Virus record (IMG/VR): IMGVR_UViG_3300042367_000228
Span: 248,001 to 312,000 of that record
DNA length: 64,000 bases
Strand: one strand, 5' to 3'
Made by a program: the position numbers and the translations under genes. The notes under the pieces were generated by a model, which did no database searches, was not told the DNA's origin, and worked only from the letters and a program-made list of their open reading frames with translations. How positions within the stretch are numbered: position 1 is the stretch's first letter; every line of letters begins with the position of its first letter. Positions 5,950-48,993 of the stretch are shown here, one piece after another.

Positions 5950-5950
5950 A

Positions 5951-7538: not shown

Positions 7539-7545
7539 AGTTACC

Positions 7546-8022
7546 TCAAAAATAGAAAGTACCGGCCGGTACTTTCATTGTTGTTGTTTGATTTGGATTA
7601 CTATTACTTGTAATATTGATAATAATTAGTCCATTATCTGTACCTGATCCTAATCCCCATGTAACCGTGTTTCCACCTAAGTCTGGAATATTTCCACAAG
7701 TTGCACCTGGGATAGTACATGTAGACCCTTCGGCAAACATGCTATCAGTAAGTTGTTTTGCTAGTTGTGAATAGATCCTTGATTCTAAGTTTGCTAAGAA
7801 TTTAGCCGCTGGCGTATTAGCTGCTGCTGATGCTGCTTTAGCTGCTAATGAATCTGCAAGTGATTTGTTTTTTTCAACACCTTGTTGTTCTAACTGTTGG
7901 ATAGTTAGAATGTGATTGCTATACCCAATTCCGCTAAATGATGGACTATTAAATGAGTGTTGGAGTTCAGCAGAAAATGCTGATGATGATACTAGTAGTA
8001 ATAATACTAAGATTTTGTTCAC
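7546..8022 (-). CDS. csgF: Curli assembly protein CsgF
   Basis: Signal peptide then ELQHSFNSPSFSG (CsgF N-terminal F.NPsFgG motif), F..NLESRIYSQLAKQL; adjacent to csgG. Confidence 0.85.
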   Translation of the reverse strand: MNKILVLLLLVSSSAFSAELQHSFNSPSFSGIGYSNHILTIQQLEQQGVEKNKSLADSLAAKAASAAANTPAAKFLANLESRIYSQLAKQLTDSMFAEGSTCTIPGATCGNIPDLGGNTVTWGLGSGTDNGLIIINITSNSNPNQTTTMKVPAGTFYF

Positions 8023-10592: not shown

Positions 10593-11474
10593 TCAGTTAC
10601 TCAATTTTTTAACAATATATTCAACCATCTCTCCTGCTATGTTAGTACCACAATAATGATCAAAACCGTTAAATCCAGGATTTGAATTAGCTTCACATAC
10701 TCTAAATCCGCGATTATCAAATAATAGATCAATACCTGCTATTTCTAATCCTAACGCTTTAGCGGTAGCCAATGCAATTTCTTCTATTTCGGGAGTTACA
10801 GTATAAGGTTCGCCTTTACCACCTATTGTAATGTTTGCACGAAAGTCGCCTTCAGGAGCAATACGTTTCATAGCTCCGAGTACTTTATCTCCTACTACAA
10901 ATACTCTTAAATCTACACCAGGGTAATCATTAAGATATTCTTGTACTAGTAGTTTTTTTTCATTATCTAAATTTTTAAGGAATTCGATTAATTTATGATA
11001 TTCTTTTTCTGTTTGACACAGATATACACCCTCACCGAAACTACCAACTAATACTTTTATTACGCAAGGAAATCCTATATGTGTTGCGATTAAGTTGTGT
11101 GTAATTGGAAAGTGTACTAACATTGTTGTCGGTACTGCTATGTTAGCGTTTGAAAGAATTTGACCAGTGTGGAATTTATTTTGTACTATATGTATACTGT
11201 TGCTCGAGTTAACGCATGGGATGCCTAGTAATTCAAAATACCTAATTACAGCTAATTCAACCGAAGTGATACCGGCACCTAATCTTATTAACACTAGGTC
11301 AGGGAGAGAAAACTCTTTGCCGTCGTATTTGATTGACTCACCAATGATGATATCAAAGTTAGAAAATTGACATACAGATGCGTCGATGTTAGAATCCATG
11401 AAACTAATAAGTAGTTTACTAGTTTCATAGTCTATTGTAGTTTGTTTTGTAAGAATTATAACAGAATGTTTCAT
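10593..11474 (-). CDS. rimK: RimK-family ATP-grasp ligase
   Basis: NKFHTGQIL, GSFGEGVYL, QEYL, DLRVFVVG, FRANITIGG, AGIDLL, EANSNPGF. Confidence 0.88.
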   Translation of the reverse strand: MKHSVIILTKQTTIDYETSKLLISFMDSNIDASVCQFSNFDIIIGESIKYDGKEFSLPDLVLIRLGAGITSVELAVIRYFELLGIPCVNSSNSIHIVQNKFHTGQILSNANIAVPTTMLVHFPITHNLIATHIGFPCVIKVLVGSFGEGVYLCQTEKEYHKLIEFLKNLDNEKKLLVQEYLNDYPGVDLRVFVVGDKVLGAMKRIAPEGDFRANITIGGKGEPYTVTPEIEEIALATAKALGLEIAGIDLLFDNRGFRVCEANSNPGFNGFDHYCGTNIAGEMVEYIVKKLSN

Positions 11475-11500
11475 ACTGTATTTATCAGTATTTGCGCACT

Positions 11501-12178
11501 CTAAATCTCAGGGAATAAACACTCATGAACAAAGCGAGTAACGTCTTCTTCGTTTAAGCCAAGTGCAGCCATTACTCGCGGTGTATGCGGGATTTGTTTT
11601 TGTTGTATTGCATAGTAGTTTTGTGCTTCTACAGTGCTTTTAACTGTGTTATTAGTGCTTGCTACGTTAAATAAGTAGTGTTTGCTAGTAAGATCTATAA
11701 TGCTGTGTATTTGCGCTATTTCACTGTCTTTTTGAATATTGCTTGCTGCAATCATATGTGGGGAAAAGATCTTTTGTCCCCACTCTGGAATATCTCTAAC
11801 TTTATCCCATTTTAACAACCCAGCCTCTGATCCAAAAAAATCTATCATTGGATGATTAGAATTACCAGCCGGACTGTAGTCATGGAAAAAACCAGTTATC
11901 TTATTGCGACCTGCAACAACATCACAACCAAAGATAGGTGCAGGATTATGGATATGTGGGAAAATGCAGCAATGCATCATCCACAATCCGTTTGAATCAC
12001 TTGCGTCTACTATATTAAGATGTGCGCGACGATAAGACTTACTAGACCAAATTCTATTAATCCAACCGTTATAATTAAAACGATCAATACCAGGTTCTGC
12101 TATTTCAGTTCCTGAACTGTTAAATCGATCTATAAGTAAGTCTTGTATTTTAACTAACTGAGATTTTAGATCACTCAT
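11501..12178 (-). CDS. Ferredoxin-dependent bilin reductase (PcyA/PcyX-like)
   Basis: RRAHLNIVD, WMMHCCIFP, PIFGCDVV, FHDYSP, PEWGQKIFS, QKQIPHTPRVM; coupled to heme oxygenase. Confidence 0.85.
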   Translation of the reverse strand: MSDLKSQLVKIQDLLIDRFNSSGTEIAEPGIDRFNYNGWINRIWSSKSYRRAHLNIVDASDSNGLWMMHCCIFPHIHNPAPIFGCDVVAGRNKITGFFHDYSPAGNSNHPMIDFFGSEAGLLKWDKVRDIPEWGQKIFSPHMIAASNIQKDSEIAQIHSIIDLTSKHYLFNVASTNNTVKSTVEAQNYYAIQQKQIPHTPRVMAALGLNEEDVTRFVHECLFPEI

Positions 12179-12708
12179 GCTAACTCTTCAAATAACTTTG
12201 TAGCAAAACTAAAACAAATTAATGCTTCTTCTGCTAGTGAATCATCTAACTTAGCACGTATTGCGTCTTTAAGTTCATTGGTATTTTCAAACTTATAGAA
12301 ATTACCTAAACCGGGAACTTTTTTAGCAATCATTTGACCGCCATACAAATCTCCCATATGCCTGACATAAATATGAGCCATTAGTTTCTTAGGATCGTCT
12401 TTAATTGTTAAAAGATGTCTCAAATACTCGTGAGTAGATTCTAATATTTTAAAATTTGGTAAATCTGGAACATCGGCTTCTAACTCAAGAAGATCTTGTT
12501 TAATTTTTTCAGCACGTTTAATGCCAGGTAGATCATCTAGTATACCTGCATCATTTGCAAATGCTTCTAAGGTTGCGTATGCAAGTTCTTGGTTAAGCAA
12601 ATAATGTGCGTACTGTTCTTTACTAATATTTCCAGAGAAAATTAGGTTAACAAATGGTTGAGATTCTGCTAGTTTATGTGCTTCTGCAGTTAGTTCTTTT
12701 AAACTCAT
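12175..12708 (-). CDS. hemO: Heme oxygenase
   Basis: LKELTAEAHKLAE (proximal His) and AHIYVRHMGDLYGGQMI signature. Confidence 0.92.
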   Translation of the reverse strand: MSLKELTAEAHKLAESQPFVNLIFSGNISKEQYAHYLLNQELAYATLEAFANDAGILDDLPGIKRAEKIKQDLLELEADVPDLPNFKILESTHEYLRHLLTIKDDPKKLMAHIYVRHMGDLYGGQMIAKKVPGLGNFYKFENTNELKDAIRAKLDDSLAEEALICFSFATKLFEELA

Positions 12709-13010
12709 AGATCTTCTTCCATTTTAATTTGTAAAGGATACCCGGCTGATCTAGCAAGTGTAGTTGATTCAACTGCCTTAATTTCTGCAATTTCAAAACT
12801 ATACACACCTGCAATGCCAGATCCAGTTTCGTGTACTTGCATAGTAATATTACCTGCAGAATTAGGATCATGTTTAAACACATCCATTAATAAAGTTACT
12901 ACAAAGTCAACAGGAGTAACGTCGTCATTAATAAGAATAACTTTCCAACGCTTTGGTTCTGAAACCTTAATTCTAACTTTTTCGTCTACTGCTACATCTG
13001 TATTTGCCAT
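12705..13010 (-). CDS. clpS: Clp protease adaptor ClpS
   Basis: WKVILINDDVTPVDFVV...MQVHETGSGIAGVY...AEIK. Confidence 0.93.
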   Translation of the reverse strand: MANTDVAVDEKVRIKVSEPKRWKVILINDDVTPVDFVVTLLMDVFKHDPNSAGNITMQVHETGSGIAGVYSFEIAEIKAVESTTLARSAGYPLQIKMEEDL

Positions 13011-13018
13011 TTGGGCTC

Positions 13019-13465
13019 CTATTTAATTTGAATTTGTCGGGGTTGTAATGCAGTTGGCATTAATCGTTCAATACCAATTGTAAGCATACCGTTTTCTACT
13101 TTAGCATCTTTAACTTCCATATATTCTGCAAGCGTAAAGGTTTGTTCAAAATCTCTAAATGCTAATCCTCGATGTAAGAATTCTTTTCTTTCATTTAGAT
13201 CAGGATTGTATTTTTCGTTATTACGTTTTTTACCTGTTATAACGAGTAAATCTTGATTAACTTCGATGTTAATATCGTACTTAGTAAAACCAGCAACTGC
13301 TACTTCTATTTCGTAGTAAGTATCGTTGTATTTTACAATGTTGTGTGGTGGATAATTGTTAGCTGCGGTTGCTGTTAATACGTTTGAAAATAAAGTATCA
13401 AACCCTATTAGTGCTTTATTTAATAATGCTAATTCTGCATTGCTTATTGTTTTTAATTGTGACAT
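13019..13465 (-). CDS. ibpA: Small heat-shock protein (Hsp20/IbpA family)
   Basis: NYPPHNI, IEVAVAGF, FLHRGLAFRDF, A..ENGMLTI. Start moved to ATG 13465 after SD AAGGAG. Confidence 0.92.
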   Translation of the reverse strand: MSQLKTISNAELALLNKALIGFDTLFSNVLTATAANNYPPHNIVKYNDTYYEIEVAVAGFTKYDINIEVNQDLLVITGKKRNNEKYNPDLNERKEFLHRGLAFRDFEQTFTLAEYMEVKDAKVENGMLTIGIERLMPTALQPRQIQIK

Positions 13466-13520
13466 AAAAATCTCCTTATTGTAAGCGAGGACTATATAAA
13501 CCCTTATGGCGTTTATTTGC
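13466..13520 (-). promoter_or_regulatory. ROSE-like RNA thermometer in hsp20 5' UTR
   Basis: CUC-G-CUU-ACAAU-AAG-GAG hairpin sequesters the SD with a bulged G (UCGCU motif); upstream hairpin AAAC-GCC-AUAA-GG-GUUU. Confidence 0.7.
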
Positions 13521-13574
13521 GTATATAATAACACAGCTGTTAACAAATGTCAACAGCTGTGTTTAAATTGTGTG

Positions 13575-14807
13575 TTACTCTTTTGGTTCTTCTGGAGTTA
13601 CTTCAGTAAAATCTGCACTAACTGTTTCTTCAGTACTCGTTGCTTCAGTAGCAGCAGCTGCAGCAGCGTTGGCTGCATCGGCTTCTTGTTTTTTAGTAAA
13701 TACCGGAGCTGCAGCTTCAAACAGTTTATTAGTTGCTTCAGTAATAGGTTCAACTTCTTCACCGTCTCTTGCAGTTTCTAATGCTAGTAACGCGTCTTCA
13801 AACGCAGTACGTTCTTCTTCAGTTAATTGATCTTTTACTTCGTCATAATCTTTCTTCAATGAATGAGATTGTGCTTCTGCACTGTTACGTGCTTCAATTA
13901 ATGACTTAGCTTTAGCATCTGCTTCTGCATTTTCCTCAGCTTCTTTAACCATACGTTCAATCTCAGCATCTGTTAGTCCTGAATCAGATTTAATAGTAAT
14001 TTTGTTCTCTTTGCCGGTAGTTTTATCTTTAGCACTTACATGCATAATACCGTTAGCATCAATATCAAAAGTTACTTCAATCTGTGGTTGACCGCGTGGA
14101 GCTGCGTCAATCCCTTCTAAGTTAAACTCACCAAGTTGTTTATTGTAACGATACAATTCACGTTCACCTTGACCTACTTTAATAGTAACTGCAGGTTGAT
14201 TATCTTCTGCTGTTGAGAATGTCTGGCTTGCTTTAGTTGGAATGGTTGTATTTTTCTGAATTAACTTAGTAAATACCCCGCCCATTGTTTCAATACCTAA
14301 ACTTAATGGAGTAACGTCAAGTAACAATACGTCAGTTTTATCACCTGCTAATACTGCACCTTGGATAGCAGCACCTGCAGCAACAGCTTCATCTGGATTA
14401 ACGTCTTTACGTGGTGCTTTTCCAAAGAATGCTTCAACAGCTTCTTGTACTTTAGGCATACGTGTTTGACCACCTACTAAAATAACTTCGTCAATATCTG
14501 ACAAACTAACTTTAGCATCAGCAATTGCAATTTTACATGGTTCGATTGAACGTTGTACTAAATCGTCTACTAATGCTTCAAACTTAGCACGAGTTACTGT
14601 TACGTTTAAGTGTTTCGGACCTGTGGCATCTGCAGTAACATATGGTAAGTTAACATTTGTTTGTGCAGTGCTTGACAATTCAATTTTAGCTTTTTCAGCA
14701 GCTTCTTTTAAACGTTGCAACGCCATTGTATCAGATTTAAGATCAACACCTGAGTCTTTCTTAAATTCGTCAATCAAATGATCCATTAATCGTTGGTCAA
14801 AGTCTTC
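13575..14807 (-). CDS. dnaK: DnaK (Hsp70) exon 2
   Basis: Starts [11 protein letters not shown]; [42 protein letters not shown]. Spliced product is 641 aa. Confidence 0.95.
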
Positions 14808-15955
14808 CAGTTATGTTATCGTTAAGCTCTTTATCTTAACTTCTTATACTTTCATATAAGCTCAGACTATATCTTAATTATAGACTTGCAATTATCAAAG
14901 TGCCATCGTTTCATATTTGACGAATCTCCAATTTTATTGCAATGTGGACAAGTTACTTGTTGTCGTTTTTTATTTTGTTTATATCTTTTTCCAGCAGCTA
15001 TACCAACTACCTCTTTAGAAATTAATCTAGGGTCATCTTTATTAACTGTAAATTTATTACCATTAATATCTTTAACAACTATCCGTCCTGCTGAAGTTGA
15101 TGTATACTGCTTTGATAAAAATTTTTCATCAGTAACTGAAACCATAATAATTTTACCAGTTTCATTAAACACTTTTGTTAACCCTTTTGTAATGCCTACT
15201 AACGATGTATCGTTTTTATTGTCAACTACTACAGTTTCGTTAGTTACGGTTTTCATAACTCGTCTACCGGTTGTGTGACCTGCATATCTATCAGGGTTTG
15301 CATCAAATGTACTTTTTGAAATTTTTACCACTGTACCTAATAAATTATCTTTAGCTACTACTTTATCTATAGAGCATTTACGTATTCGTTCAATACCAAA
15401 GGATGAATGTGTAATTACTCCACGACCACCTTCTGTTAAATTATAAACGTCGTCTCGTTTAATAAAGATCGAATCTACTAATTTAGCTTCATATTCATAT
15501 GCATCATGTTTTGAATTGCAAAATTCTAATATGTCGCGTTTGAAATTAGTTTTTCCATATTTCTTTATTGCTTGTTTTAATAATTTTCCAGACCCTATAT
15601 AGCCGTCGTTAATATTAGTAGTTTCATGTACACCAATATAAATGGTGTTATTAATTAAATTAGTTGTTTTGTAAACAAAATATATCTTATCCATATCTTC
15701 CCCTCCTATAATTTTATTTATCATAAGATTAGAAGATCTATAATTTTCCGCACTCTTGGGTCTTTACTGTCCTATCTGGACTCCATGACCTAGTCGTTGA
15801 ACCTTGAACTTATTCCTAAGTCCCTTGGCTGCTGATTTCCCAATCTATTCATTTTTTAACGTTCGCACTTATCATTACTAATTATGCTGTAGTATGAATA
15901 GCTCTAAGGGGTTCCCAGCAATTCACGGAATTTTTATACGGGAGGCTAATACTTA
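14808..15955 (-). mobile_element. Group I intron (phage IA-type) in dnaK, 1148 nt
   Basis: Exon 1 ends in U (GGU), intron ends in G; P1 GGU|UAA..UUAGCC; P GAAUUGCUGGGAA (15911-15924), Q AAUCAGCAG (15829-15837), R GUUCAACGACUA (15791-15802), S AAGAUAUAGUCU (14864-14875); P9 with GAAA loop. Removal restores TFLGG-EDFD. Confidence 0.93.
14867..15694 (-). CDS. Intron-encoded GIY-YIG homing endonuclease
   Basis: FVYKTTNLINNTIYIGVH...YIGSG; C-terminal CPHC...MKRWHFDNCK; internal late promoter GATAAATA ~15715; stop TAG lies inside the S element. Confidence 0.88.
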   Translation of the reverse strand: MDKIYFVYKTTNLINNTIYIGVHETTNINDGYIGSGKLLKQAIKKYGKTNFKRDILEFCNSKHDAYEYEAKLVDSIFIKRDDVYNLTEGGRGVITHSSFGIERIRKCSIDKVVAKDNLLGTVVKISKSTFDANPDRYAGHTTGRRVMKTVTNETVVVDNKNDTSLVGITKGLTKVFNETGKIIMVSVTDEKFLSKQYTSTSAGRIVVKDINGNKFTVNKDDPRLISKEVVGIAAGKRYKQNKKRQQVTCPHCNKIGDSSNMKRWHFDNCKSIIKI

Positions 15956-16728
<773 letters not shown>

Positions 16729-37496: not shown

Positions 37497-37742
37497 TTAG
37501 TACATGCGTTTACGATTTGCAGATACTGGATTTGCTTCTTTTTGCAGTTTTTTACGATAGCGTGCTTTAGCTGCACCTGCTTCTCGTTTACGTTTCGTAG
37601 TTGGTTTTTCATAAAACTCTTTTTTACGTAACGTTTCTAATTTTCCAGAATCTTCAACTTTGCGCTTAAATCGTCTTAACGATTGTGTAATGTTTTCATT
37701 TTCGCGCATTGTTACTTTAACTCTATTCTGCGTTGTTATCAT
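37497..37742 (-). CDS. rpsU: Ribosomal protein bS21
   Basis: RENENITQSLRRFKRKVEDSGKLETLRKKEFYEKPTTKRKR. Confidence 0.92.
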   Translation of the reverse strand: MITTQNRVKVTMRENENITQSLRRFKRKVEDSGKLETLRKKEFYEKPTTKRKREAGAAKARYRKKLQKEANPVSANRKRMY

Positions 37743-38133
37743 CGTCTTCCTCTTTGTTGATTTGTTCTACAATCCAATCTAAATCAAATATTCTATTTTT
37801 AGAGATTAAATTGTAAGGTGTTAGTTCGTCATTAGTTATATAGTATGCATTAGGATGTGTAAGCATAAATGTGACAAACGATTTTGTAATCGGATCACAA
37901 TTATCAATATCGATAATTACTACTGCTACTTGATTTGTAACACTTAGTAACCAATCAATATCTGCCTCATCAGTGTCATAGATAAAAATATTAATATCTT
38001 CATCGCTTTCGCCAATAATTGCATGAAACTGTTCTAGTACATGCGTTGATGGTTTTACTAACAAATAACCAACATCTAAATTAAAAAATTTATCAGGAGG
38101 GGTAATAACCGTAATTCTTCCTAATGGATTCAT
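37723..38133 (-). CDS. Hypothetical protein
   Basis: 136-aa ORF (ITPPD motif). Confidence 0.65.
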   Translation of the reverse strand: MNPLGRITVITPPDKFFNLDVGYLLVKPSTHVLEQFHAIIGESDEDINIFIYDTDEADIDWLLSVTNQVAVVIIDIDNCDPITKSFVTFMLTHPNAYYITNDELTPYNLISKNRIFDLDWIVEQINKEEDDDNNAE

Positions 38134-38141
38134 GTGACCTT

Positions 38142-38648
38142 CTATGTGGTAATTAATTTTGCCTTGTATTTATCAGAGAAGGACTTGACCGCTAATGATA
38201 CTTTCTGTACCCCAGCTATTCCAATTGCTTTTGCAGCAGCCTTTGATAAATCAATAATTCTACCTTTAGAAAAGGGACCTCTATCATTTATTCTAACTAA
38301 TACTGTTTGGTTATTAGCTAAATTAGTTACTTCAACTATAGTTCCAAATGGCAATGTTTTATGTGCTGCAGTTAGTTCTTTTGGACTAAAATATTCTCCG
38401 TTTGCAGTTTTAGGTCTGCGTCGATATCTAGGTCCAGATTCGTAACCATACCAACTAGCTATACCTTGCATTTCGTTAGATGTATGTGCTGATCTAAGTC
38501 TATGCTTATAATGCAGGTGTTTAGTTTTTTTATGTACACTGTGTTGTATTGAATGATTGTCAGTCGAATGTTTAGTAGCTGCATCTACTGGAGCTACGGT
38601 GGTAATTATTGAGAGGGCAAGGATCCCTGTTATTAGTGAATTTTTCAT
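38142..38648 (-). CDS. rlpA: RlpA-like DPBB lytic transglycosylase
   Basis: [39 protein letters not shown]; start moved to MKNSL after SD AAAGGAG. Confidence 0.9.
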
Positions 38649-38654
38649 TTTTTC

Positions 38655-38890
38655 TCCTTTCACTTGGTGTGTATTAAAACAACTACACATTACATTAAGG
38701 GAGTAAACTGCACGAGGTTCTTCGAACCCATTTTGTTCGTGACGTCTTCTCCATCAGCCACAACATAAACTGCATGTTGCACCTTTGGCAAGCCTGGCTT
38801 CCCGAATTTCGCGGGTTTCTACTTTGGCCAAGACTCGCAGGATTGATTACATCTCTCAATCCAACTATCTTAGTTTCTCTCGAAACATAT
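38655..38890 (-). ncRNA. Long structured 5' leader of rlpA (candidate cis-regulatory RNA)
   Basis: GC-richer ORF-free region with at least six hairpins, e.g. GTTTC-GAGA-GAAAC, GGATTGA/TCAATCC, CCCG-CGAAATT-CGGG, CAACAT/ATGTTG, CACGA..GGTTC-GAA-GAACC-TCGTG. Confidence 0.6.
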
Positions 38891-38963
38891 AATATATAGC
38901 ATTGAACTTTAAAATTCTGTTAAAAAAGTGACTTTTTAACGAATTAAACTATACTATTTGCAC

Positions 38964-38992
38964 ATTATACGCTTGTTATTATATTTTGTCAA
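38964..38992 (-). promoter_or_regulatory. Sigma70-type promoter upstream of the rlpA leader
   Basis: TTGACA-17 nt-TATAAT. Confidence 0.75.
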
Positions 38993-39029: not shown

Positions 39030-40016
39030 ATGAAAATACAAGATTTAATGGAAGGATATATTGCTGATTCACTTCCAGATTTAATTAATCACGCAAAATC
39101 GTTAATTATAATGTATACGAAAACATTACCTGAAATAGTACACAAATATGATTTCTCAGTTAATGATCCATATAATCCAACTGAACTTGGATTAGCAAAT
39201 AGAGATATCAATGCATGTAAATTACAAGTAGGTAGTGTTAGATCAGTCTGGTTTACTAACAATTATTTGTCAGTTACTAAAAACAGAGCAGGTACCGGAA
39301 TGCAAGGCGGCAAATCTGCACGCGGTTTGAAAAATGCGTTAGTTACCTTATCAGAAATTCCAGAACTACGTAAAGTACACGGTTTAAATCGTTTAGCGCA
39401 TTTAGATGTAAACATTAATCCAAATAATAAAGTTCAAGCAACTGTATCTCAGCGTGTAAAAGGAACTGCACCAAAAGAAGCTGATATTCAAACATATGGT
39501 GAATTAATGAGGCATCTTGAAAATCTTTTACCAGACGTTATAAAAGCTATTGCTAAAGTGGCTAAGCCGCAGGATTTAGAATCTAGTTTTTTAAATGCAG
39601 AAGAAGTATTCGGAATAGGTGTTAGACTTGAAAATGCTATTGATAGATGGGAAAGTGTAAAAGGTACTATTCCAAAAAAATACGAAGGCGGAACTAGTTA
39701 TAAAAAACAAGGTGACGCATTAGTAGCTACACACAAAAATAAAGGTGCAGACCTAGGTAAAAGTGATATAATGAAACCGGCTGAAAAGCCTGTTAAGAAA
39801 CATGATACACATTCTCAAAATATGAGTGCTGCTCAAGACGCAATTAATCAAGGGTTTGAAGTACTTAAAAAGAATGGTATTAAAGATCATGAACTACATG
39901 CAATTAGACAAAAAGTTCAAAGAAGTGATAATCAACTAATGGCGTTAATGCAAGTATTCCAAGAATTTGGAATCAATCCAAATCCGTTAATGGAAGCTTG
40001 GTTAAAAACATATTAA
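39030..40016 (+). CDS. Hypothetical late protein with MKIQDLME tag
   Basis: TAAATA at 39004-39009, SD AGGAG. Confidence 0.75.
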   Translation: MKIQDLMEGYIADSLPDLINHAKSLIIMYTKTLPEIVHKYDFSVNDPYNPTELGLANRDINACKLQVGSVRSVWFTNNYLSVTKNRAGTGMQGGKSARGLKNALVTLSEIPELRKVHGLNRLAHLDVNINPNNKVQATVSQRVKGTAPKEADIQTYGELMRHLENLLPDVIKAIAKVAKPQDLESSFLNAEEVFGIGVRLENAIDRWESVKGTIPKKYEGGTSYKKQGDALVATHKNKGADLGKSDIMKPAEKPVKKHDTHSQNMSAAQDAINQGFEVLKKNGIKDHELHAIRQKVQRSDNQLMALMQVFQEFGINPNPLMEAWLKTY

Positions 40017-40017
40017 G

Positions 40018-40044
40018 AAAAAAGGGCTAATTAGCCCTTTTTTT
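40018..40044. terminator. Bidirectional intrinsic terminator
   Basis: AAAAAAGGGCTAA-TTAGCCCTTTTTTT between convergent genes. Confidence 0.8.
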
Positions 40045-40117
40045 AACGATTGTGAATATACATAGTAACTTCAAAGCCGAAACGTAAATCAACATATGTT
40101 GGTGTTTCCCATTTCAT
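40043..40117 (-). CDS. pqqA: Coenzyme PQQ precursor peptide PqqA (24 aa)
   Basis: MKWETPTYVDLRFGFEVTMYIHNR*: W-x-x-P...D-x-R-x-G-F-E-V-T-x-Y with the ExxxY cross-link motif; SD AAAGGAGGTGA upstream; terminator downstream. Confidence 0.93.
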   Translation of the reverse strand: MKWETPTYVDLRFGFEVTMYIHNR

Positions 40118-40133
40118 AACTATCACCTCCTTT

Positions 40134-40811
40134 TTATTTTGGTTTTATCGTAATTGTTATTGTACTTTCTGAACTAGTATCTTTACCTTTGTTTAAGGTA
40201 CCGCCTGAATCTTTTATTTTAAATCCTATAGCTGCATGTTGAGTACCATTTTTAGATCCATCTGGATAATACGCTAACAACGATACATTAGCTGATGGAA
40301 CACTTTGATTAGCTTTAACATTAGCTTTTCCTAATTTAAGTCTTCCGACTTTTGGTAATTTTGATATAATAACTGCGCTAATGCTGTTATTATCAATATC
40401 TTTAAATTTAAAATCAGATTGAGTAAAATGTTTAACAACTCTTTTAGTTATAGTAAACGCATTAGCGATTGCAGTCGGTGGTTCATTAGCAGAAACCGAC
40501 GATGTGCTATCGCCGGCATACACGTTATCACTGCCTGACGAAATTGTTCCAGCATCTGCTTTATCAGTATCTCTTGCAATCGGTATATTATTAACAAACA
40601 CAGTTGCAGATCCAGCTTTAATAGTTTCTGTGTGATTTACACACTTGTCACCTACTTTATGAGTATGAACTTTTATAGCATCTCCTTTTCTACAAACACC
40701 AATGTTATTAACAAATACATTAGTTGAACATTTGTCGGTGTTAGTAGTCGCAGTGCATAAGTGACCTGTTGATACTGTATCTTTACCTTTACCTCTTGCA
40801 ACTCGTGGCAT
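40134..40811 (-). CDS. PAAR spike-tip protein (gp5.4-like) with C-terminal Ig/cadherin-like extension
   Basis: MPRVAR, NVFVNNIGVCRKGD, GSATVFVNNIPIAR, SGSDNVYAG, followed by NEPPTA...DFKFKDIDN. Confidence 0.8.
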   Translation of the reverse strand: MPRVARGKGKDTVSTGHLCTATTNTDKCSTNVFVNNIGVCRKGDAIKVHTHKVGDKCVNHTETIKAGSATVFVNNIPIARDTDKADAGTISSGSDNVYAGDSTSSVSANEPPTAIANAFTITKRVVKHFTQSDFKFKDIDNNSISAVIISKLPKVGRLKLGKANVKANQSVPSANVSLLAYYPDGSKNGTQHAAIGFKIKDSGGTLNKGKDTSSESTITITIKPK

Positions 40812-40832
40812 AATATTATCCTAAAATAATAT

Positions 40833-41120
40833 TTATACAATAAGACCTGTAGTAGCTTTAGTGTAAGAAGATGCTGATTCTTTTTCAGTTGGTTCTAATA
40901 CTACTACCGTTGCGATTGCAATCTTAATTGTTTTATCTGGATCAACAGTAAACAAATAAGGTGCCATTCCAATTCCACCTTGTGCAGCTGCTAATACACG
41001 TGGTTTTGAAACTTTAATGTATTTGTCAGTTTCTTCAACTAATGATGCAATTAGTTCTTCGCCTGAAGTAAGTTTAATTGTAACTACTTCGCCTGGTGAT
41101 ACACCTTTATCTATAATCAT
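40833..41120 (-). CDS. Conserved phage protein (Sm-like fold suspected)
   Basis: GEVVTIKLTSGEELIA...KP pattern. Confidence 0.55.
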   Translation of the reverse strand: MIIDKGVSPGEVVTIKLTSGEELIASLVEETDKYIKVSKPRVLAAAQGGIGMAPYLFTVDPDKTIKIAIATVVVLEPTEKESASSYTKATTGLIV

Positions 41121-41349
41121 AATTTGCCTTTAAGTATTGTTGTAATTCTGAAAACCCACCGATGTAATTGCCATCAATTTGAATCTGTGGTAATGTTCTT
41201 GCTGTTGGTACATCTTCTAACAGTTGTTCTTTAGTCCAACCTCCATTAGAGATATTTCTTTCTTCAAAGTTAATGTTTTTCATTTGTAACAAGCTCTTAG
41301 CTTGCACGCAGTACGGGCACTGGTCTTTCGACCAAATTATTGCTGTCAT
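41107..41349 (-). CDS. grx: Glutaredoxin
   Basis: CPYC, RTLPQI, YIGGF. Confidence 0.93.
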   Translation of the reverse strand: MTAIIWSKDQCPYCVQAKSLLQMKNINFEERNISNGGWTKEQLLEDVPTARTLPQIQIDGNYIGGFSELQQYLKANYDYR

Positions 41350-41631: not shown

Positions 41632-41695
41632 AATTACCTTATGATGTTTAAAAAACTGTATTATACAATATTATTATCATCCTGTCAATAATATT

Positions 41696-41765: not shown

Positions 41766-42545
41766 ATGATATTTATCGATAACAAATACACACGATTATA
41801 TTTTAAAATAATCAATCGCGCTAACTCTAAAAGATTGTCTGAGTATTCAGAAAATCATCATATTATTCCAGAATCATTTTTTATTAATCGATCTAGAAAA
41901 GGACCTGCCGGATGGCTTAATGGAAACCCAGAAGATTCATCAAATATTGTGTCGTTAACTGCAAGAGAACATTTTATTTGTCATTGGTTACTTATTAAAA
42001 TGACTACCGGAGATGCTAAACACAAAATGATATTTGCTATAACGATGATGAAACGTAAAGGCACAAATCAACAAAATAGATATAACACTATGATTACTAG
42101 TAGAGTTTATGCAATTTATAAGGAACAATCTGCTAAAATAAAAAGTGAGATATATTTTGGTCGAGTGCGGAATAAAACACTATATACATTTTGTCATTCT
42201 AATGGAACAGTAGAAACTTGCTCTATACTAGAATTATCTCACAAATATAATCTAGAGCGTTCTAGTATTGCGCATCTTGTTAAAAAACCGTTTGGAAAGC
42301 ATCATGTAAAAGGATGGTCTATTAACCATCCTATATTAGATACTGCTAGAAGTGTATTATATTCCGGCTCAGGAGGACCAAAGTATGATCATACTGTTTA
42401 TTCATTTAAACATAAAAGTGGAATAACTGAACAATGTACTAAGTATGATTTATTTTCTAAATATAATTTAGCTAGAGACGGAATATATTACATTTGTAAT
42501 GGTAAACAAAAATCATCACAAGGATGGTTTTTAGATATCAGGTAA
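41766..42545 (+). CDS. Free-standing HNH (MobE-like) homing endonuclease
   Basis: ENHHIIPES...NIVSLTAREHFICHWLL; two C-terminal HTH-like repeats ending KGW/QGW; convergent on the nrdB 3' end. Confidence 0.85.
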   Translation: MIFIDNKYTRLYFKIINRANSKRLSEYSENHHIIPESFFINRSRKGPAGWLNGNPEDSSNIVSLTAREHFICHWLLIKMTTGDAKHKMIFAITMMKRKGTNQQNRYNTMITSRVYAIYKEQSAKIKSEIYFGRVRNKTLYTFCHSNGTVETCSILELSHKYNLERSSIAHLVKKPFGKHHVKGWSINHPILDTARSVLYSGSGGPKYDHTVYSFKHKSGITEQCTKYDLFSKYNLARDGIYYICNGKQKSSQGWFLDIR

Positions 42546-45151: not shown

Positions 45152-45703
45152 TTAACTAACTGTTTCATTTATGTAGTTCCAGTTTATTATTTTCCATTGA
45201 TTTTCTAAGTACTTTTTCTTGTCTGATTGATAGTCTAACGCCCATGAATGTTCCCACCAATCAACTAACAATACAATGTCTTTTTTAATAGCATGATTAG
45301 TTATTGTTTTGATCTTGCCATCTTTAGCAAGATAGACCCAACCACTGCCTTGTATGCCCATTGCTACTTTTAAAAACTCTTCTTTAAACTTATCAAAAGT
45401 TTTATAATGTGTTTCAATTAAATCTAAAACTTTGCCAACTGGTTTGTTTAAGTTGCCAGTTGACTCTTGATATTGTTGGAATAAGATATTGTGTAAAAAT
45501 ACACCTGCTTCATTAAACACAGGATCACCTTCACCTGCATTATAACGCTTTGCGTATGTTTTAGCAAGACGTTCATAATGATAATCTAATGTTGCTTTTG
45601 ATATAGCAGGACTTAACTCATCCATTCCGTATGGTAGAGGATCTATTTTTAATGATGCAGGTTTACCTTCAGTTATGAATTGCTTAATAAAACTATAGCT
45701 CAT
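45152..45703 (-). CDS. sod: Fe/Mn superoxide dismutase
   Basis: LPY...TLDYHY, LHNILF, QGSGWVYL, DWWEHSW. Confidence 0.88.
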   Translation of the reverse strand: MSYSFIKQFITEGKPASLKIDPLPYGMDELSPAISKATLDYHYERLAKTYAKRYNAGEGDPVFNEAGVFLHNILFQQYQESTGNLNKPVGKVLDLIETHYKTFDKFKEEFLKVAMGIQGSGWVYLAKDGKIKTITNHAIKKDIVLLVDWWEHSWALDYQSDKKKYLENQWKIINWNYINETVS

Positions 45704-46662
45704 AGCTTACAGGCCTCGCAGGATTCTTCATCGTCTTCAATAATTGCACTAGGTAAATCAACTTCGGCTTCTTCTTTACTACCTGTTTTATCAATTAAAC
45801 TATAGTAGAAAGTTTTCAAACCCCAATAGTGACCTAACATTAAGTTTTTAGCAATTAGTGTAGTTGGGACTTTTCTACCTTCAAAGTGTCTAGGTGAATA
45901 AAATGTATTTGTGCTAATACTTTGATCTACGTATGCAGCCAATACAGCAGCAGTTTTCAAATAACCTACACAATCAGTTTGTTCCCACATAAGTTGATAT
46001 TTGTTTTTCAATTTATGATATTCCGGAACTACTTGTGTAAGTGAACCAGCTTTTGATTCTTTAACTTGAATAAGTTGCATTGGCATTTCAATTCCATTAG
46101 TTGAATTAATTACAACTGAACTTGATTCTACTGGAGCTATAGCCATTTGAGTCGCATTTCGTACACCGTATTTTTTCATTTCAACACGCAATGGTTCCCA
46201 ATCAAGTTCTGGTGTAAAATCAGTCAATTCATTAACACCGTCTGCACGTAGTTCCCATGGAAATATACCTTGTCCGTATCGAGTTTTATCACTATCTAAA
46301 CATGGTCCACGCTCCTTAGCCAGTTCAACCGATATTTCAGTAGTATAAAATGCTAAATGTTCCATCCAGCTTTTAACTTCAGCAAGCATATCTGCGTCTC
46401 CGTATTTAAAATTGCGTTTAGCTGCCCAGTATGCTAAATTTGTAACTCCAATTCCTAATGGTCGAATTTCATCATTACTTAGTTTACTGTGGATTGACAG
46501 ATAATCTTGGTAATCTAAAATATTGTTTAAACTGCGGTGAAGAATACGACAAGCTCTGCGCATATCTTCCGGATTTCTAAAACTCCCCCAATTAATACTG
46601 CCTAAGGTGCATAAGGCTATTTTTGGAACTTTACGCACACATTCTTTTTTAATTATTTTCAT
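45700..46662 (-). CDS. nrdA: RNR alpha subunit C-terminal fragment (NrdA-b)
   Basis: IALCTLGSINWG, RPLGIG, AIAPVESSS, DQSISTN, KTFYY, CEACKL; preceded by non-NrdA MKIIKKECVRKVP. Confidence 0.93.
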   Translation of the reverse strand: MKIIKKECVRKVPKIALCTLGSINWGSFRNPEDMRRACRILHRSLNNILDYQDYLSIHSKLSNDEIRPLGIGVTNLAYWAAKRNFKYGDADMLAEVKSWMEHLAFYTTEISVELAKERGPCLDSDKTRYGQGIFPWELRADGVNELTDFTPELDWEPLRVEMKKYGVRNATQMAIAPVESSSVVINSTNGIEMPMQLIQVKESKAGSLTQVVPEYHKLKNKYQLMWEQTDCVGYLKTAAVLAAYVDQSISTNTFYSPRHFEGRKVPTTLIAKNLMLGHYWGLKTFYYSLIDKTGSKEEAEVDLPSAIIEDDEESCEACKL

Positions 46663-47425
46663 GATTTATTGTTCTTCCTATACGCCAATTTGTATTTTCT
46701 AAAAGATACTCATTAATAGACGATGAGTCAATCCTAATATTAGTGTACCCATCTGTTATCCATCTCCATTTTGAAGACTGTATTGATAACAAACTTTTTT
46801 GTGTTGGGCTTCTATAATGCGGGTTGTATTTAACTTGTTCAGTGGCAGTTAATGTAGCGTTAACTAAGTTAATCAAATCTGTATGATTTTTAATTCCTCG
46901 ATTAGATATCAATCTACTGCTAATAGATAGCTCAGATTTTAATACAGAATCAATTTCATTTCGAAGTAAATAACTACCGTATTTGAAATTTTCATGTATA
47001 TAATTAACTATAGTGTTAATAATATCGATAGCTGTAATATCAGGCCGAGCATTTCCGTTATTCATACCTGCACTTAGCTTACTTCTATTTTTACCCCATT
47101 CTATTAATTGTTTTTTAGAATATCGTTCTTTTGTGTTGCCGCCATCACCGCCACGGGTCATATTGTACCCGTAGCTAAACGTATCAAGCAAGTCTATATA
47201 ATATATTTCTTTTGATTTTGCATCAGATTGTGTACTACATTCATCTAATTTTTCAGTTATAATAGTATTTTCACCATATTTTCTAATTGCACGATGAAAA
47301 TATGTATCAGAACCGTTTCTACTATCTTGAATGTGTTCGTCTAATCGAACGTTAATATTTTTTTCAGTGTATCCTATGTATTTTTTGTTATTAATAGTGT
47401 GACAATATATATTATAAGTTTTCAT
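46649..47425 (-). CDS. GIY-YIG homing endonuclease inserted in nrdA
   Basis: NIYCHTINNKKYIGYT...RLDEH...FHRAIRKYG...E.YYI...GYNMTRGGDG; own late promoter CTAAATA at ~47446-47452. Confidence 0.88.
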   Translation of the reverse strand: MKTYNIYCHTINNKKYIGYTEKNINVRLDEHIQDSRNGSDTYFHRAIRKYGENTIITEKLDECSTQSDAKSKEIYYIDLLDTFSYGYNMTRGGDGGNTKERYSKKQLIEWGKNRSKLSAGMNNGNARPDITAIDIINTIVNYIHENFKYGSYLLRNEIDSVLKSELSISSRLISNRGIKNHTDLINLVNATLTATEQVKYNPHYRSPTQKSLLSIQSSKWRWITDGYTNIRIDSSSINEYLLENTNWRIGRTINHENN

Positions 47426-47463
47426 AAATATCTTCCTCTTGCTTGTATTTAGCAGAGATACTA

Positions 47464-48993
47464 CTACCCACTTATTAAAAGATTATCAATATCGTCATCT
47501 TCAGACAACTCTCGAACTTTCTTTTTCTCACCTGATTTTAATAATACCGTGTGTTCTCCTGCTAATGTTACTTCCTCTCCAGTGTCAAGTGTGAGTTTAA
47601 ATCCACCTTCATCGGATAACGAATTAAACGGTGCAGTTGGTAAAAGTATTTCGCAGCATAAATTACTTTGATAAATTGTATGCCATAACGGATCAAATGG
47701 TCCTTGCTTAATTACGTTATCTATAAAGACTAAGTAGATGCGCCCGGTGTCAGTTCGTTCTTTTAGGAGTCCTCCTTTGAATACTTCTTCCGCAGACATG
47801 GTCTTCTTCCGAACTCCTGTATTTTTTTCATACTGTAGGTACAGTTTTTCAAAGAGAGCTGTATCAGTGTAAAACGCTTCGTATAAGTCTGGAACTTCAT
47901 TAGGATCAAAAAATGTTATGTTTTCTTTGTTTTTAAATCTACGCCAAAAGAACGCGCTTAATACAACGCTGTAATCTAAATGACGCACCCGTGTTTCATC
48001 TGTGCCTTGATTGTTTTTAAGTACAATTAAGTCGTCGAACTGATAATGCCAAATCGGATATGTTACAGTAGCACTAGCATTTCTAATACCACCTTGTGAA
48101 CAGCAACGCAAGTCACCAAACCATTTCTTTAAAAATGGAATCATACCTGTGTGCATAATTTCACCACCGCGTATAGGACTTCCTAGTGCGCGTACACGAC
48201 CAATTTCTAAACCTATGCCAGCACGTTTGCTAGCATATTTTGCCATCATCTCGCCACTAGCAAATATAGAATCCAAATCGTCATCACTGCGTATGAGAAC
48301 GCAGCTGCTGAATTGTTTAGTTGGAGTTCCGAGCCCAGCAAGAACGGGTGTAGCAAGAGTAAATAAGCCATCGGATGCAGCATTATAATATTCCTTAATA
48401 TATTTCATTCTAGCTGCATTTGGTTCTTCCTTATGGAACACAGTTGCAGCTGCAATCATATACCTAACTTGTGGAGTTTCGTAAATGTCTTTAGTAGATC
48501 GATTACGGACTAAGTATTTCTCAATAAGCTGTTCAATTGCAGCATATGAGTAAGTTTCATCTTTTGAATGATCAAGCATGTCATTCATTTTGTTCCATTC
48601 TTCAGTTGAATACCACTCTAATAACTCTGGTGTGTATAATCCAACTTCGATGTTCTTTTTAACTATTGTAAATAGATGCGGTGGCTCGTATTGGCCGTAT
48701 ACATCTTTGCGGAGCATAGACAAACGCTGTTTGCCTGCAACGTATTGATAATTTGTATGACCTACATCTGGGTTGGCGTCAACATCAATTAAGTTAACGA
48801 TTGCTCGCAGTGTAATTTCGTCAATTTCAGATGTAGTAATATTATCGTAAAATTGTGGCTGGCTTTTAATTTCGATCATTGATTGACTAACATCGGCAAT
48901 TCCACTGCAAATCTTTGCAATCTGCGCCTGCCATTTGTCAATTGTTAGTTCTACTTTAGTGCCATTTCTTTTTGTAACTGTTATTTTATTCAT
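47464..48993 (-). CDS. nrdA: RNR alpha subunit N-terminal fragment (NrdA-a)
   Basis: ATP cone VTKRNG, QFSSCVL, CSQGGIRN, QSNLCCEILLP, then a ~47-aa non-NrdA tail. Confidence 0.93.
   Translation of the reverse strand: MNKITVTKRNGTKVELTIDKWQAQIAKICSGIADVSQSMIEIKSQPQFYDNITTSEIDEITLRAIVNLIDVDANPDVGHTNYQYVAGKQRLSMLRKDVYGQYEPPHLFTIVKKNIEVGLYTPELLEWYSTEEWNKMNDMLDHSKDETYSYAAIEQLIEKYLVRNRSTKDIYETPQVRYMIAAATVFHKEEPNAARMKYIKEYYNAASDGLFTLATPVLAGLGTPTKQFSSCVLIRSDDDLDSIFASGEMMAKYASKRAGIGLEIGRVRALGSPIRGGEIMHTGMIPFLKKWFGDLRCCSQGGIRNASATVTYPIWHYQFDDLIVLKNNQGTDETRVRHLDYSVVLSAFFWRRFKNKENITFFDPNEVPDLYEAFYTDTALFEKLYLQYEKNTGVRKKTMSAEEVFKGGLLKERTDTGRIYLVFIDNVIKQGPFDPLWHTIYQSNLCCEILLPTAPFNSLSDEGGFKLTLDTGEEVTLAGEHTVLLKSGEKKKVRELSEDDDIDNLLISG

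What the first reader, a model, noticed from the sequence alone, without database searches (positions are those of the whole stretch)
40043..40133. Phage-encoded PqqA, the PQQ cofactor precursor peptide, missed by the ORF track
Seen: a 75-nt minus-strand ORF, MKWETPTYVDLRFGFEVTMYIHNR, with SD AGGAGGTGA, placed after the PAAR gene and closed by a terminator. Established: PqqA is the ribosomal peptide whose ExxxY Glu and Tyr are cross-linked by PqqE/PqqD to make PQQ, the cofactor of methanol dehydrogenases (MxaF/XoxF) and other quinoprotein dehydrogenases; one peptide is consumed per cofactor. Inference: the phage supplies only the stoichiometric substrate (no pqqBCDE in this window) to the host pathway to sustain quinoprotein-driven energy flux, a minimal auxiliary metabolic gene. 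From memory the sequence resembles PqqA of gammaproteobacterial methanotrophs. I know of no description of phage pqqA but cannot verify that.
Basis: partly seen in the sequence, partly recalled or inferred. Interest (0 to 1): 0.92.

Follow-up and report, generated by a model that had tools for sequence, protein, structure and literature searches.

The report
Orphan pqqA cassette in lake jumbo phage
A 372-kb lake phage carries a real, stand-alone copy of pqqA, the tiny gene for the peptide that bacteria turn into the cofactor PQQ. The gene is of the methane-oxidiser type, but phage pqqA has been reported before, so this is a well-documented new example and not a first.

Summary
Window 40043-40117 (-) is a 24-codon ORF with a strong Shine-Dalgarno site and a hairpin terminator. 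It scores twice the curated cut-off of both PqqA models.

- **Where it sits.** It is in a T4/cyanophage-like jumbo phage, identical to a 372,016-bp IMG/VR contig. The phage occurs in at least 21 lake or freshwater DNA runs. An independent 2016 contig bridges both junctions with no differences.
- **Orphan status.** No pqqB-E, PmoC or PQQ dehydrogenase is present in the 64 kb.
- **Host type.** The peptide is of the Methylococcales/Cycloclasticus type (21-22 of 24 residues). It is identical to no annotated bacterial PqqA, and its GC3 is phage-like.
- **Cassette structure.** In relatives it is a discrete unit of about 92 nt lying between the PAAR stop codon and the terminator. It follows several different PAAR alleles and is precisely absent from three close relatives.
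- **Wider pattern.** Orphan pqqA is common in viruses: more than 160 IMG/VR contigs, none with pqqB/C nearby. It is also present but unannotated in cultured Methylophilales phages, three of whose peptides are identical to annotated Methylophilaceae PqqA.

Function, as a precursor fed to the host PqqBCDE enzymes, is inferred and untested. No transcript evidence was obtained.

The parts
40043..40117 (-). pqqA: 24-codon ORF plus TAA stop. It carries the invariant W3, P6, R12, G14 and the cross-link pair E16/Y20.
   Evidence: PF08042 42.8 bits, TIGR02107 43.2 bits. It is the only such motif in the window.
40118..40133 (-). Shine-Dalgarno site and spacer (AAAGGAGGTGATAGTT). Together with the ORF it forms the roughly 92-nt cassette that some relatives lack.
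   Evidence: Conserved in 14 viral contigs. Absent together with the ORF in L290, L298 and L299.
40018..40044 (.). Terminator hairpin with both an A-tract and a T-tract, shared by pqqA (-) and the convergent ORF 39030-40016 (+). The A-tract overlaps the last two bases of the pqqA stop codon.
   Evidence: Fold of -13.6 kcal/mol, z = -3.6. The stem is kept and only the loop varies in relatives. The hairpin is present directly after the PAAR stop in relatives without pqqA.
40134..40811 (-). PAAR-domain protein gene (225 aa), probably co-transcribed with pqqA. The allele differs between related phages.
   Evidence: At least four different 3' ends precede the same cassette.
40830..40837 (-). T4-type late-promoter-like TATAAATA, 19 nt upstream of the PAAR start. 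This is the candidate promoter of a PAAR-pqqA unit.
   Evidence: Four of five minus-strand copies in the window lie roughly 15-30 nt upstream of a gene start, but the overall count is not above chance.
41660..41688 (-). Perfect sigma-70 consensus (TTGACA-17-TATAAT) upstream of orf58, glutaredoxin, the phrog_527 gene, PAAR and pqqA. This is an alternative, earlier promoter.
   Evidence: 12 of 12 matches. A consensus match only.
39030..40016 (+). Convergent 328-aa ORF of unknown function that ends at the shared terminator. It is replaced by other sequence in several relatives.
   Evidence: No Pfam or PHROG hit..

Best explanation
This is a genuine phage-borne, stand-alone pqqA gene, carried as a minimal cassette of about 92 nt (ribosome-binding site plus 24 codons). 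The cassette is slotted between the stop codon of a PAAR spike gene and a pre-existing terminator in a 372-kb freshwater T4/cyanophage-like jumbo phage. It has no promoter of its own and is read through from the PAAR transcription unit.

The most likely mechanism is as follows. The peptide is made in the infected cell and handed to the host's own PqqD/PqqE, protease, PqqB and PqqC enzymes. These consume one peptide per PQQ molecule. PQQ supply for periplasmic methanol dehydrogenases and other quinoproteins therefore continues after host pqqA expression declines. The peptide type points to a Methylococcales-like gammaproteobacterial methane or C1 oxidiser as host.

Shown: identity as PqqA, phage location, orphan status in the window, cassette structure, presence/absence polymorphism, and host-type resemblance.

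Inferred: transcription, processing by host enzymes, benefit to the phage, and host identity.
For: - **Identity.** Both curated HMMs score at twice their cut-off with full model coverage. E16 and Y20 and all family-invariant residues are kept in every phage copy.
- **Real phage DNA.**
  - The window is 100% identical to IMG/VR contig 3300042367_000228 (372,016 bp).
  - At least 21 lake or freshwater DNA runs from 2016-2025 hold the region.
  - An independent 851-nt contig spans 39974-40824 with 0 differences.
  - The flanks encode tail fibres, baseplate wedge, PAAR, RNR, glutaredoxin, homing endonucleases and a T4 gp9/10 N domain.
  - GC is uniformly about 0.34.
- **Not host contamination.** 0 of 160 viral pqqA loci have a PqqB or PqqC homologue nearby, against 80 of 120 bacterial loci (queries Pfam-verified).
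- **Long residence and selection.** pqqA GC3 is 0.25 in the phage family against 0.44 in bacteria. There are synonymous differences between relatives, with pN/pS of 0.33. The SD site and terminator stem are conserved. The exact peptide is found in no annotated bacterial protein.
- **Cassette nature.** The same unit follows at least 4 different PAAR 3' ends. It is precisely absent, with the PAAR TAA abutting the terminator, in L290, L298 and L299.
- **Host type.** The peptide pattern is dominated by Methylococcales: 69 of 120 loci overall, and 62 of those 69 are of the DLR..I-x-NR type. Cycloclasticus is nearest at 22 of 24 residues.
- **Calibration.** In cultured phage-host pairs the phage PqqA is identical to a peptide that NCBI annotates as PqqA of the host's family or genus: P19250A with Ca. 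Methylopumilus, and Venkman with Methylophilaceae.
- **Orphan copies work in trans.** Methylotroph genomes carry several stand-alone pqqA copies, some highly expressed (PMC9851590).
- **Precedent.** Viral PqqA was proposed as an AMG in Lake Baikal viruses (PMC7678222).
Against: - **No expression evidence.** No RNA run was listed for the PAAR-pqqA stretch. The two metatranscriptome assemblies laid on the region covered only relatives' conserved flanks.
- **Not essential.** 6 of 14 close relatives at this locus lack the cassette.
- **Need is unclear.** PQQ is a reusable cofactor, so the need for new synthesis during one infection is not established. Over-expression of pqq genes gives only limited PQQ gains in bacteria (PMC9851590).
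- **Host inference is limited.** The search pattern fixed 17 positions, which inflates the identity figures.
- **Biased selection measure.** pN/pS was measured on sequences found through the conserved motif, which is an ascertainment bias.
- **Promoters.** Promoter assignments are consensus matches only.
Confidence: 0.65

Rival explanations
1. Neutral passenger. The cassette is a captured host fragment that spreads among related phages by recombination but gives the phage no benefit.
For: Distribution among close relatives is patchy, with 8 further carriers and 6 non-carriers. There is a clean indel at A-rich junctions. No expression data exist.
Against: GC3 has shifted to phage composition. 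There are synonymous but few non-synonymous differences, and every family-invariant residue is kept. The strong SD site is conserved. Unrelated phage lineages (myo-, sipho- and podoviruses) acquired it independently, each with the peptide type of its own host's family.
Confidence: 0.12
2. Decoy or regulator. The phage peptide ties up PqqD/PqqE, or otherwise modulates host PQQ synthesis, without yielding cofactor. This might limit formaldehyde production or SAM use.
For: Nothing direct. The window variant (H22) and the family variants are identical to no annotated bacterial PqqA.
Against: The differences lie only at positions that also vary among bacterial PqqA (7, 9, 11, 22). E16, Y20 and the whole core are intact. 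In phages of Methylophilaceae the peptide is identical to annotated Methylophilaceae PqqA, which fits a substrate and not an inhibitor.
Confidence: 0.06
3. Untranslated element. The conserved segment acts only as RNA or DNA, for example as part of the terminator or a recombination site, and the ORF is incidental.
For: The cassette abuts a terminator. Its nucleotide identity among relatives (about 95.7%) is higher than that of its flanks.
Against: A full-length match to two curated peptide HMMs cannot arise incidentally. Relatives that lack the cassette keep a working terminator on its own. The substitutions present are biased to synonymous sites.
Confidence: 0.04
4. Assembly chimera or bacterial contamination of a viral contig.
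For: None found. One database 'phage' hit (Acinetobacter phage MD-2021a) is indeed a bacterial pqqABCDE contig.
Against: There are identical independent assemblies and a bridging contig from another run. Fourteen related viral contigs carry the same junctions. No PqqB/C lies nearby. None of the 43 bacterial loci checked (all 40 without PqqB/C nearby, plus three low-GC ones) shares anything with the window except pqqA.
Confidence: 0.01

Closest known systems
Bacterial PqqA of Methylococcales (NCBI 'MULTISPECIES PqqA [Methylococcales]') and of Cycloclasticus
   Same: Same length (24 aa) and the same N-terminal MKWETP, core RFGFEVTMYI and C-terminal NR. Identity is 21 of 24 and 22 of 24.
   Different: The phage copy is an orphan, whereas the bacterial copy usually precedes pqqB and pqqC. 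It has T7, V9 and H22. Its GC3 is 0.25 against 0.44. The best nucleotide identity is 88%.
Viral PqqA reported in Lake Baikal viral population VP_266 (Coutinho et al. 2020, PMC7678222)
   Same: A phage-encoded PqqA precursor interpreted as an auxiliary metabolic gene supporting methanol oxidation.
   Different: That virus was assigned to methylotroph (Methylophilaceae-type) hosts, and related populations also carried methanol dehydrogenase. Here the peptide is of the methanotroph (Methylococcales) type, the phage is a 372-kb jumbo phage, and no dehydrogenase lies in the window.
Unannotated pqqA in cultured Methylophilales phages (Melnitz, Venkman, MEP301, MEP401/402, P19250A)
   Same: Orphan pqqA with its own SD site, passing PF08042. 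The peptide type matches the host's family. Melnitz is also a T4/cyanophage-like myovirus with Hsp20 and curli genes.
   Different: These are the 23-24 aa 'MWT..EMR..VMNK' type, in different genomic positions. The records leave the ORF unannotated or call an antisense ORF there.
pmoC-phages (Chen et al. 2020, PMC7674155)
   Same: Large freshwater phages (159-527 kb, GC 32-44%) related to cyanophages, carrying Hsp20 and predicted to infect methanotrophs and boost methane oxidation.
   Different: No PmoC lies in this window, and the rest of the genome was not seen. That paper does not mention PQQ.
Cyanophage psbA (own knowledge, analogy only)
   Same: The phage supplies the one component of a host energy pathway that is consumed or turned over fastest.
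   Different: psbA encodes a whole protein subunit. pqqA encodes a sacrificial 24-residue substrate.

Membership tests
PqqA (PF08042 / TIGR02107 equivalog) | Score above the curated cut-off of the family HMMs over the full model | tested here: met
   42.8 bits against 21.1, and 43.2 bits against 20, with the model covered end to end.
PqqA (PF08042 / TIGR02107 equivalog) | Short ribosomal peptide (about 20-40 aa) with Glu and Tyr in an E-x-x-x-Y arrangement for the cross-link | tested here: met
   24 aa with E16 and Y20. These are invariant in all 26 unique viral sequences of this length.
PqqA (PF08042 / TIGR02107 equivalog) | Typical but not defining: location next to pqqB-E | tested here: not met
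   No PqqB/C/D/E was found in the 64-kb window. Orphan copies are also normal in bacteria: 40 of 120 loci lack PqqB/C nearby, and stand-alone copies are described in PMC9851590.
PqqA (PF08042 / TIGR02107 equivalog) | Converted to PQQ by PqqD/E, a protease, PqqB and PqqC | not testable with these tools
   Needs complementation or an in vitro assay.
Phage auxiliary metabolic gene (orphan viral pqqA) | Encoded in a bona fide viral genome with viral genes on both sides | tested here: met
Phage auxiliary metabolic gene (orphan viral pqqA) | Expressed during infection and alters host metabolism | tested here: inconclusive
   No RNA run was listed for the gene. The RNA contigs covered only neighbouring conserved genes of relatives.
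Phage auxiliary metabolic gene (orphan viral pqqA) | The host has the rest of the pathway | tested here: inconclusive
   The host is only inferred. Methylococcales genomes do carry pqqA-pqqB-pqqC.
pmoC-phages | Encodes PmoC | tested here: inconclusive
   No AmoC/PmoC hit among the window ORFs of at least about 80 aa that were scanned. The other 308 kb of the contig was not available.

The most novel reading that the evidence does not exclude
Orphan pqqA may be a general signature gene of phages that infect C1 oxidisers, matched to the host lineage, and it would extend here to methanotroph-infecting jumbo phages. It has been largely overlooked because 70-75-nt ORFs are not called. It moves as a minimal cassette of about 92 nt that is gained and lost within populations. 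That would imply precursor-peptide supply is the step of PQQ-dependent energy metabolism that fails first in infected cells. The peptide type could then serve as a host barcode for uncultured phages.
Probability: 0.45. Interest if true: 0.65.

Novelty: new member of a known kind. Interest (0 to 1): 0.5.

Why it matters
If the phage peptide is used, viruses of methane and methanol oxidisers act on the cofactor supply of methanol dehydrogenase, a central step of the freshwater C1 cycle. They would do so with the smallest auxiliary gene imaginable. There are two practical points. First, the gene is systematically missed by gene callers, even in published isolate genomes. Second, its sequence type tracks the host family in cultured pairs, so it could help assign hosts to uncultured phages. 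The clean with/without variants among natural relatives offer a ready comparison for testing its value to the phage.

Tried and rejected
- **Megablast of 5 kb against the GenBank phage collection:** no match.
- **'Acinetobacter phage MD-2021a' tblastn hits:** rejected as evidence for phage pqqA. The record carries ppk and pqqBCDE and is a bacterial contig.
- **Simple terminator scanner:** it did not flag the hairpin. Folding did.
- **RNA evidence:** no run was listed for the PAAR-pqqA stretch. Contigs from two metatranscriptomes matched only relatives' conserved genes at 37500-38900 and 40870-41310, which says nothing about pqqA.
- **Host clues from other host-like genes:** CsgG and SOD gave only viral clusters in the protein atlas.
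- **Phage contigs in bacterial bins:** I asked whether bacterial loci lacking pqqB/C, or of low GC, were really phage contigs. Apart from pqqA, none shares anything with the window.
- **TATAAATA count in the window:** not above chance (10 against 13.7 expected). Only the positions of the copies are suggestive.

Full report
**1.

On the minus strand, 40117 to 40043 reads ATG, 23 further codons and TAA. Sixteen bases (AAAGGAGGTGATAGTT) separate it from the stop codon of the upstream gene at 40134-40136, so a near-perfect Shine-Dalgarno site sits 5 nt before the ATG.

Immediately after the stop there is an A-run, a GGGC/GCCC stem and six T. This folds at -13.6 kcal/mol (z = -3.6). With A- and T-tracts on either side it can terminate both pqqA and the convergent plus-strand ORF 39030-40016.

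The peptide hits Pfam PqqA at 42.8 bits (cut-off 21.1) and NCBIfam TIGR02107 at 43.2 bits (cut-off 20), in both cases over the whole model. The window has 1572 stop-to-stop segments of at least 20 aa, and this is the only one with the motif. Chance is not an explanation.

**2. The surroundings are a phage.**

Flanking genes include:
- a collagen-like tail fibre, a baseplate-wedge-like 903-aa protein, the PAAR protein, a T4 gp9/10 N domain and Mtd_N-domain tail-fibre-like proteins;
- glutaredoxin, NrdA and NrdB, and RNA ligase;
- several HNH and GIY-YIG homing endonucleases.

GC is even at about 0.34 across the site. Structural and Hsp20 proteins are nearest to cyanophage, pelagimyophage and Melnitz-type T4-like phages.

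The window is identical to positions 248001-312000 of IMG/VR contig 3300042367_000228, which is 372,016 bp, so this is a jumbo phage. At least 21 lake-water or freshwater DNA runs dated 2016-2025 hold the region. In a 2016 run an 851-nt contig covers 39974-40824 without a single difference, bridging terminator, pqqA and PAAR gene. Misassembly is excluded.

**3. The gene is an orphan.**

Pfam scans covered about 77 window ORFs. That is every long minus-strand ORF and most plus-strand ORFs that do not overlap one. They found no PqqB, PqqC, PqqD, PqqE, PmoC/AmoC or PQQ-dependent dehydrogenase.

PqqB and PqqC taken from Methylomicrobium lacus were verified by Pfam. With these as queries, tblastn finds nothing in the window.

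**4. The peptide is of the methanotroph type.**

Of these, 69 are named Methylococcales (Methylobacter, Methylomonas, Crenothrix, Methylomicrobium, Methylovulum and others) and 5 are Cycloclasticus or Piscirickettsiaceae.

The window's D-L-R ... I-x-N-R form is the Methylococcales form (62 of 69). A different D-I-R ... I-N-N-K form belongs to other, mostly unnamed, gammaproteobacterial MAGs.

The nearest bacterial peptides are:
- the Cycloclasticus one, at 22 of 24 residues;
- the one NCBI names 'MULTISPECIES PqqA [Methylococcales]', at 21 of 24 residues and present on 227 contigs.

Because the pattern fixed 17 positions, these identities are partly built in. The informative result is which taxa satisfy the pattern.

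The exact phage peptide, and the commoner ...IYNR variant of its relatives, are absent from the 15-billion-protein collection. The phage copy has also drifted to phage composition. GC3 is 0.25 against 0.44 in bacteria, and the best nucleotide identity is 88%.

**5. Anatomy in relatives.**

Fourteen IMG/VR contigs related to the window carry the same SD-ORF-hairpin unit at about 95.7% nucleotide identity. They include a 372,173-bp, a 171.6-kb and an 88.6-kb contig.
- The unit lies behind at least four different PAAR-gene 3' ends and in front of two alternative downstream sequences.
- Differences inside the ORF are mostly synonymous (F13, V17, T7, V9, R12), or fall at positions 7, 9, 11 and 22, which also vary among bacteria.
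- pN/pS is 0.33. The caveat is that these sequences were found through the conserved core.

To remove that bias I anchored on the neighbouring phrog_527-like gene. Among relatives with at least 83% anchor identity and enough downstream sequence, eight further contigs carry pqqA and six do not. None of the more distant relatives has it at this site.

In three non-carriers (L290, L298, L299) the orthologous PAAR gene ends in TAA and is followed at once by the same terminator. The window therefore differs from them by an insert of about 92 nt made only of the SD site and pqqA, with A-rich junctions at both ends. The cassette has no promoter of its own.

Candidate promoters are a T4-late-type TATAAATA 19 nt before the PAAR start and a perfect sigma-70 consensus at 41688-41660. 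Both are consensus matches only.

**6. Orphan pqqA is common in viruses.**

tblastn of the peptide against GenBank phages hits the Methylophilales phages Melnitz (four isolates), Venkman, MEP301, MEP401, MEP402 and P19250A, plus a spring-water podovirus.
- In every case the ORF is unannotated or overlapped by an antisense 'hypothetical protein'.
- All pass the Pfam cut-off.

A second scan for the W-E-T-P type found 42. None of these 160 loci has PqqB or PqqC nearby, against 80 of 120 bacterial loci.

For cultured pairs the phage peptide equals a peptide annotated for the host's family or genus:
- P19250A (host LD28) carries the peptide NCBI annotates for Candidatus Methylopumilus universalis;
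- Venkman (host OM43) carries one annotated for Methylophilaceae;
- the spring podovirus carries the 'MULTISPECIES [Methylophilaceae]' peptide.

A distant relative of the window phage, L329, carries a Methylophilaceae-type pqqA elsewhere in the same gene neighbourhood. These facts support repeated acquisition matched to the host lineage, and they give some calibration for reading host lineage from the peptide type.

**7. Mechanism.**

Established knowledge of the pathway is summarised in PMC7678222 and PMC9851590 and the work they cite by Barr et al. 2016 and Koehn et al. 2019. PqqD presents PqqA to the radical-SAM enzyme PqqE, which links Glu and Tyr. Proteolysis, PqqB and PqqC then complete PQQ, and one peptide is spent per cofactor. 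Methylotrophs keep several stand-alone pqqA copies, some strongly expressed, so a copy supplied in trans is plausible as substrate.

The best reading is that the phage tops up the sacrificial precursor while the longer-lived host enzymes persist. This would keep methanol dehydrogenase and other quinoproteins supplied during a long jumbo-phage infection.

Against this reading:
- no transcript evidence was obtained;
- the gene is dispensable in close relatives;
- PQQ is reusable;
- raising pqq gene expression has given only limited PQQ gains in bacteria.

The rival readings are a neutral passenger, a decoy, an untranslated element and an artefact. Each fits the data less well, for the reasons listed under the rival explanations.

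**8. Novelty.**

The literature search found two:
- Coutinho et al. 2020 (PMC7678222) describe PqqA in a Lake Baikal viral population infecting methylotrophs and propose the same role.
- A 2026 reservoir study lists viral pqqA, pqqD and pqqE (PMC13188868).

Neither the pmoC-phage paper (PMC7674155) nor a survey of viral methane-metabolism genes (PMC10904782) mentions PQQ. The Melnitz paper mentions PQQ only as a medium supplement.

The case here is therefore a new member of a known kind. What is new is the methanotroph-type peptide, the jumbo-phage carrier, the defined minimal cassette with natural presence/absence variants, and the evidence that the gene is far more widespread and less annotated than the literature suggests.

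I rate interest at 0.5. The finding is solid and useful, but it is not the first of its kind and has no functional proof.

Noticed in passing
window 3710-8022 (-): A curli-type secretion cluster in a phage. It comprises CsgG (6684-7538, 164.6 bits), a weak CsgF hit (7546-8022), a FecR-domain protein (4864-5949) and a protein with a curlin repeat (3710-4867). The atlas places the CsgG in large viral clusters.
   Followed up: partly
window 10593-13546 (-): A run of host-like genes: RimK ATP-grasp ligase, a ferredoxin-dependent bilin reductase (11501-12178) next to heme oxygenase (12175-12708), ClpS (12705-13010) and Hsp20 (13019-13546). Bilin-synthesis genes are unexpected in a phage that does not appear to infect cyanobacteria.
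   Followed up: no
window 13575-16648 (-) and 45700-48993 (-): Two essential-type genes are each split by a GIY-YIG homing endonuclease gene. DnaK/Hsp70 is split into an N part at 15953-16648 and a C part at 13575-14786, with the endonuclease at 14867-15724. NrdA is split into an N part at 47464-48993 and a C part at 45700-46662, with the endonuclease at 46649-47425. An HNH-type endonuclease (41766-42545, +) lies beside nrdB.
   Followed up: no
window 37497-37742 (-) and 45152-45703 (-): A phage-encoded ribosomal protein S21 (55.3 bits) and a Fe/Mn superoxide dismutase. The SOD falls in all-viral clusters in the atlas.
   Followed up: partly
window 40134-40811 (-); L290, L292, L294, L301, L303: The PAAR spike gene upstream of pqqA is highly variable among close relatives. 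There are at least four unrelated 3' halves, and some relatives have an extra gene between the phrog_527 gene and PAAR. The neighbouring genes stay 85-95% identical, which suggests a host-range or effector module under diversifying exchange.
   Followed up: partly
L329 7161-7229 (+): A distant relative of the window phage (anchor protein 61% identical) carries a Methylophilaceae-type pqqA with an R-Y-G core. It lies after a cold-shock gene and a beta-barrel-like gene, not after PAAR. This is an independent acquisition of a different host type.
   Followed up: partly
L001 3967-4072 (Melnitz MZ577097.1 76100-76205); L007 2067-2195: In published phage records the pqqA ORF is not annotated, and an antisense 'hypothetical protein' is called over it. 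In Melnitz it sits just before tRNA-Leu and the gp5 baseplate hub genes.
   Followed up: yes
L002 (CAKLQF020000010.1 104204-112275): The record named 'Acinetobacter phage MD-2021a' carries ppk and a complete pqqA-B-C-D-E operon at this place. Here it looks like bacterial chromosome and not phage.
   Followed up: partly
L129-L167 (viral); L177, L184, L204, L211 and others (genomes): A second large group of viral orphan pqqA has the D-I-R ... I-N-N-K peptide type. It matches peptides annotated in marine 'Legionellales' and unnamed gammaproteobacterial MAGs. The hosts of these phages are unknown.
   Followed up: partly
window 38964-38992 (-) and 41660-41688 (-): Two perfect 12-of-12 sigma-70 consensus promoters (TTGACA, 17 nt, TATAAT) lie within 3 kb, each in front of a minus-strand gene group.
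   Followed up: no
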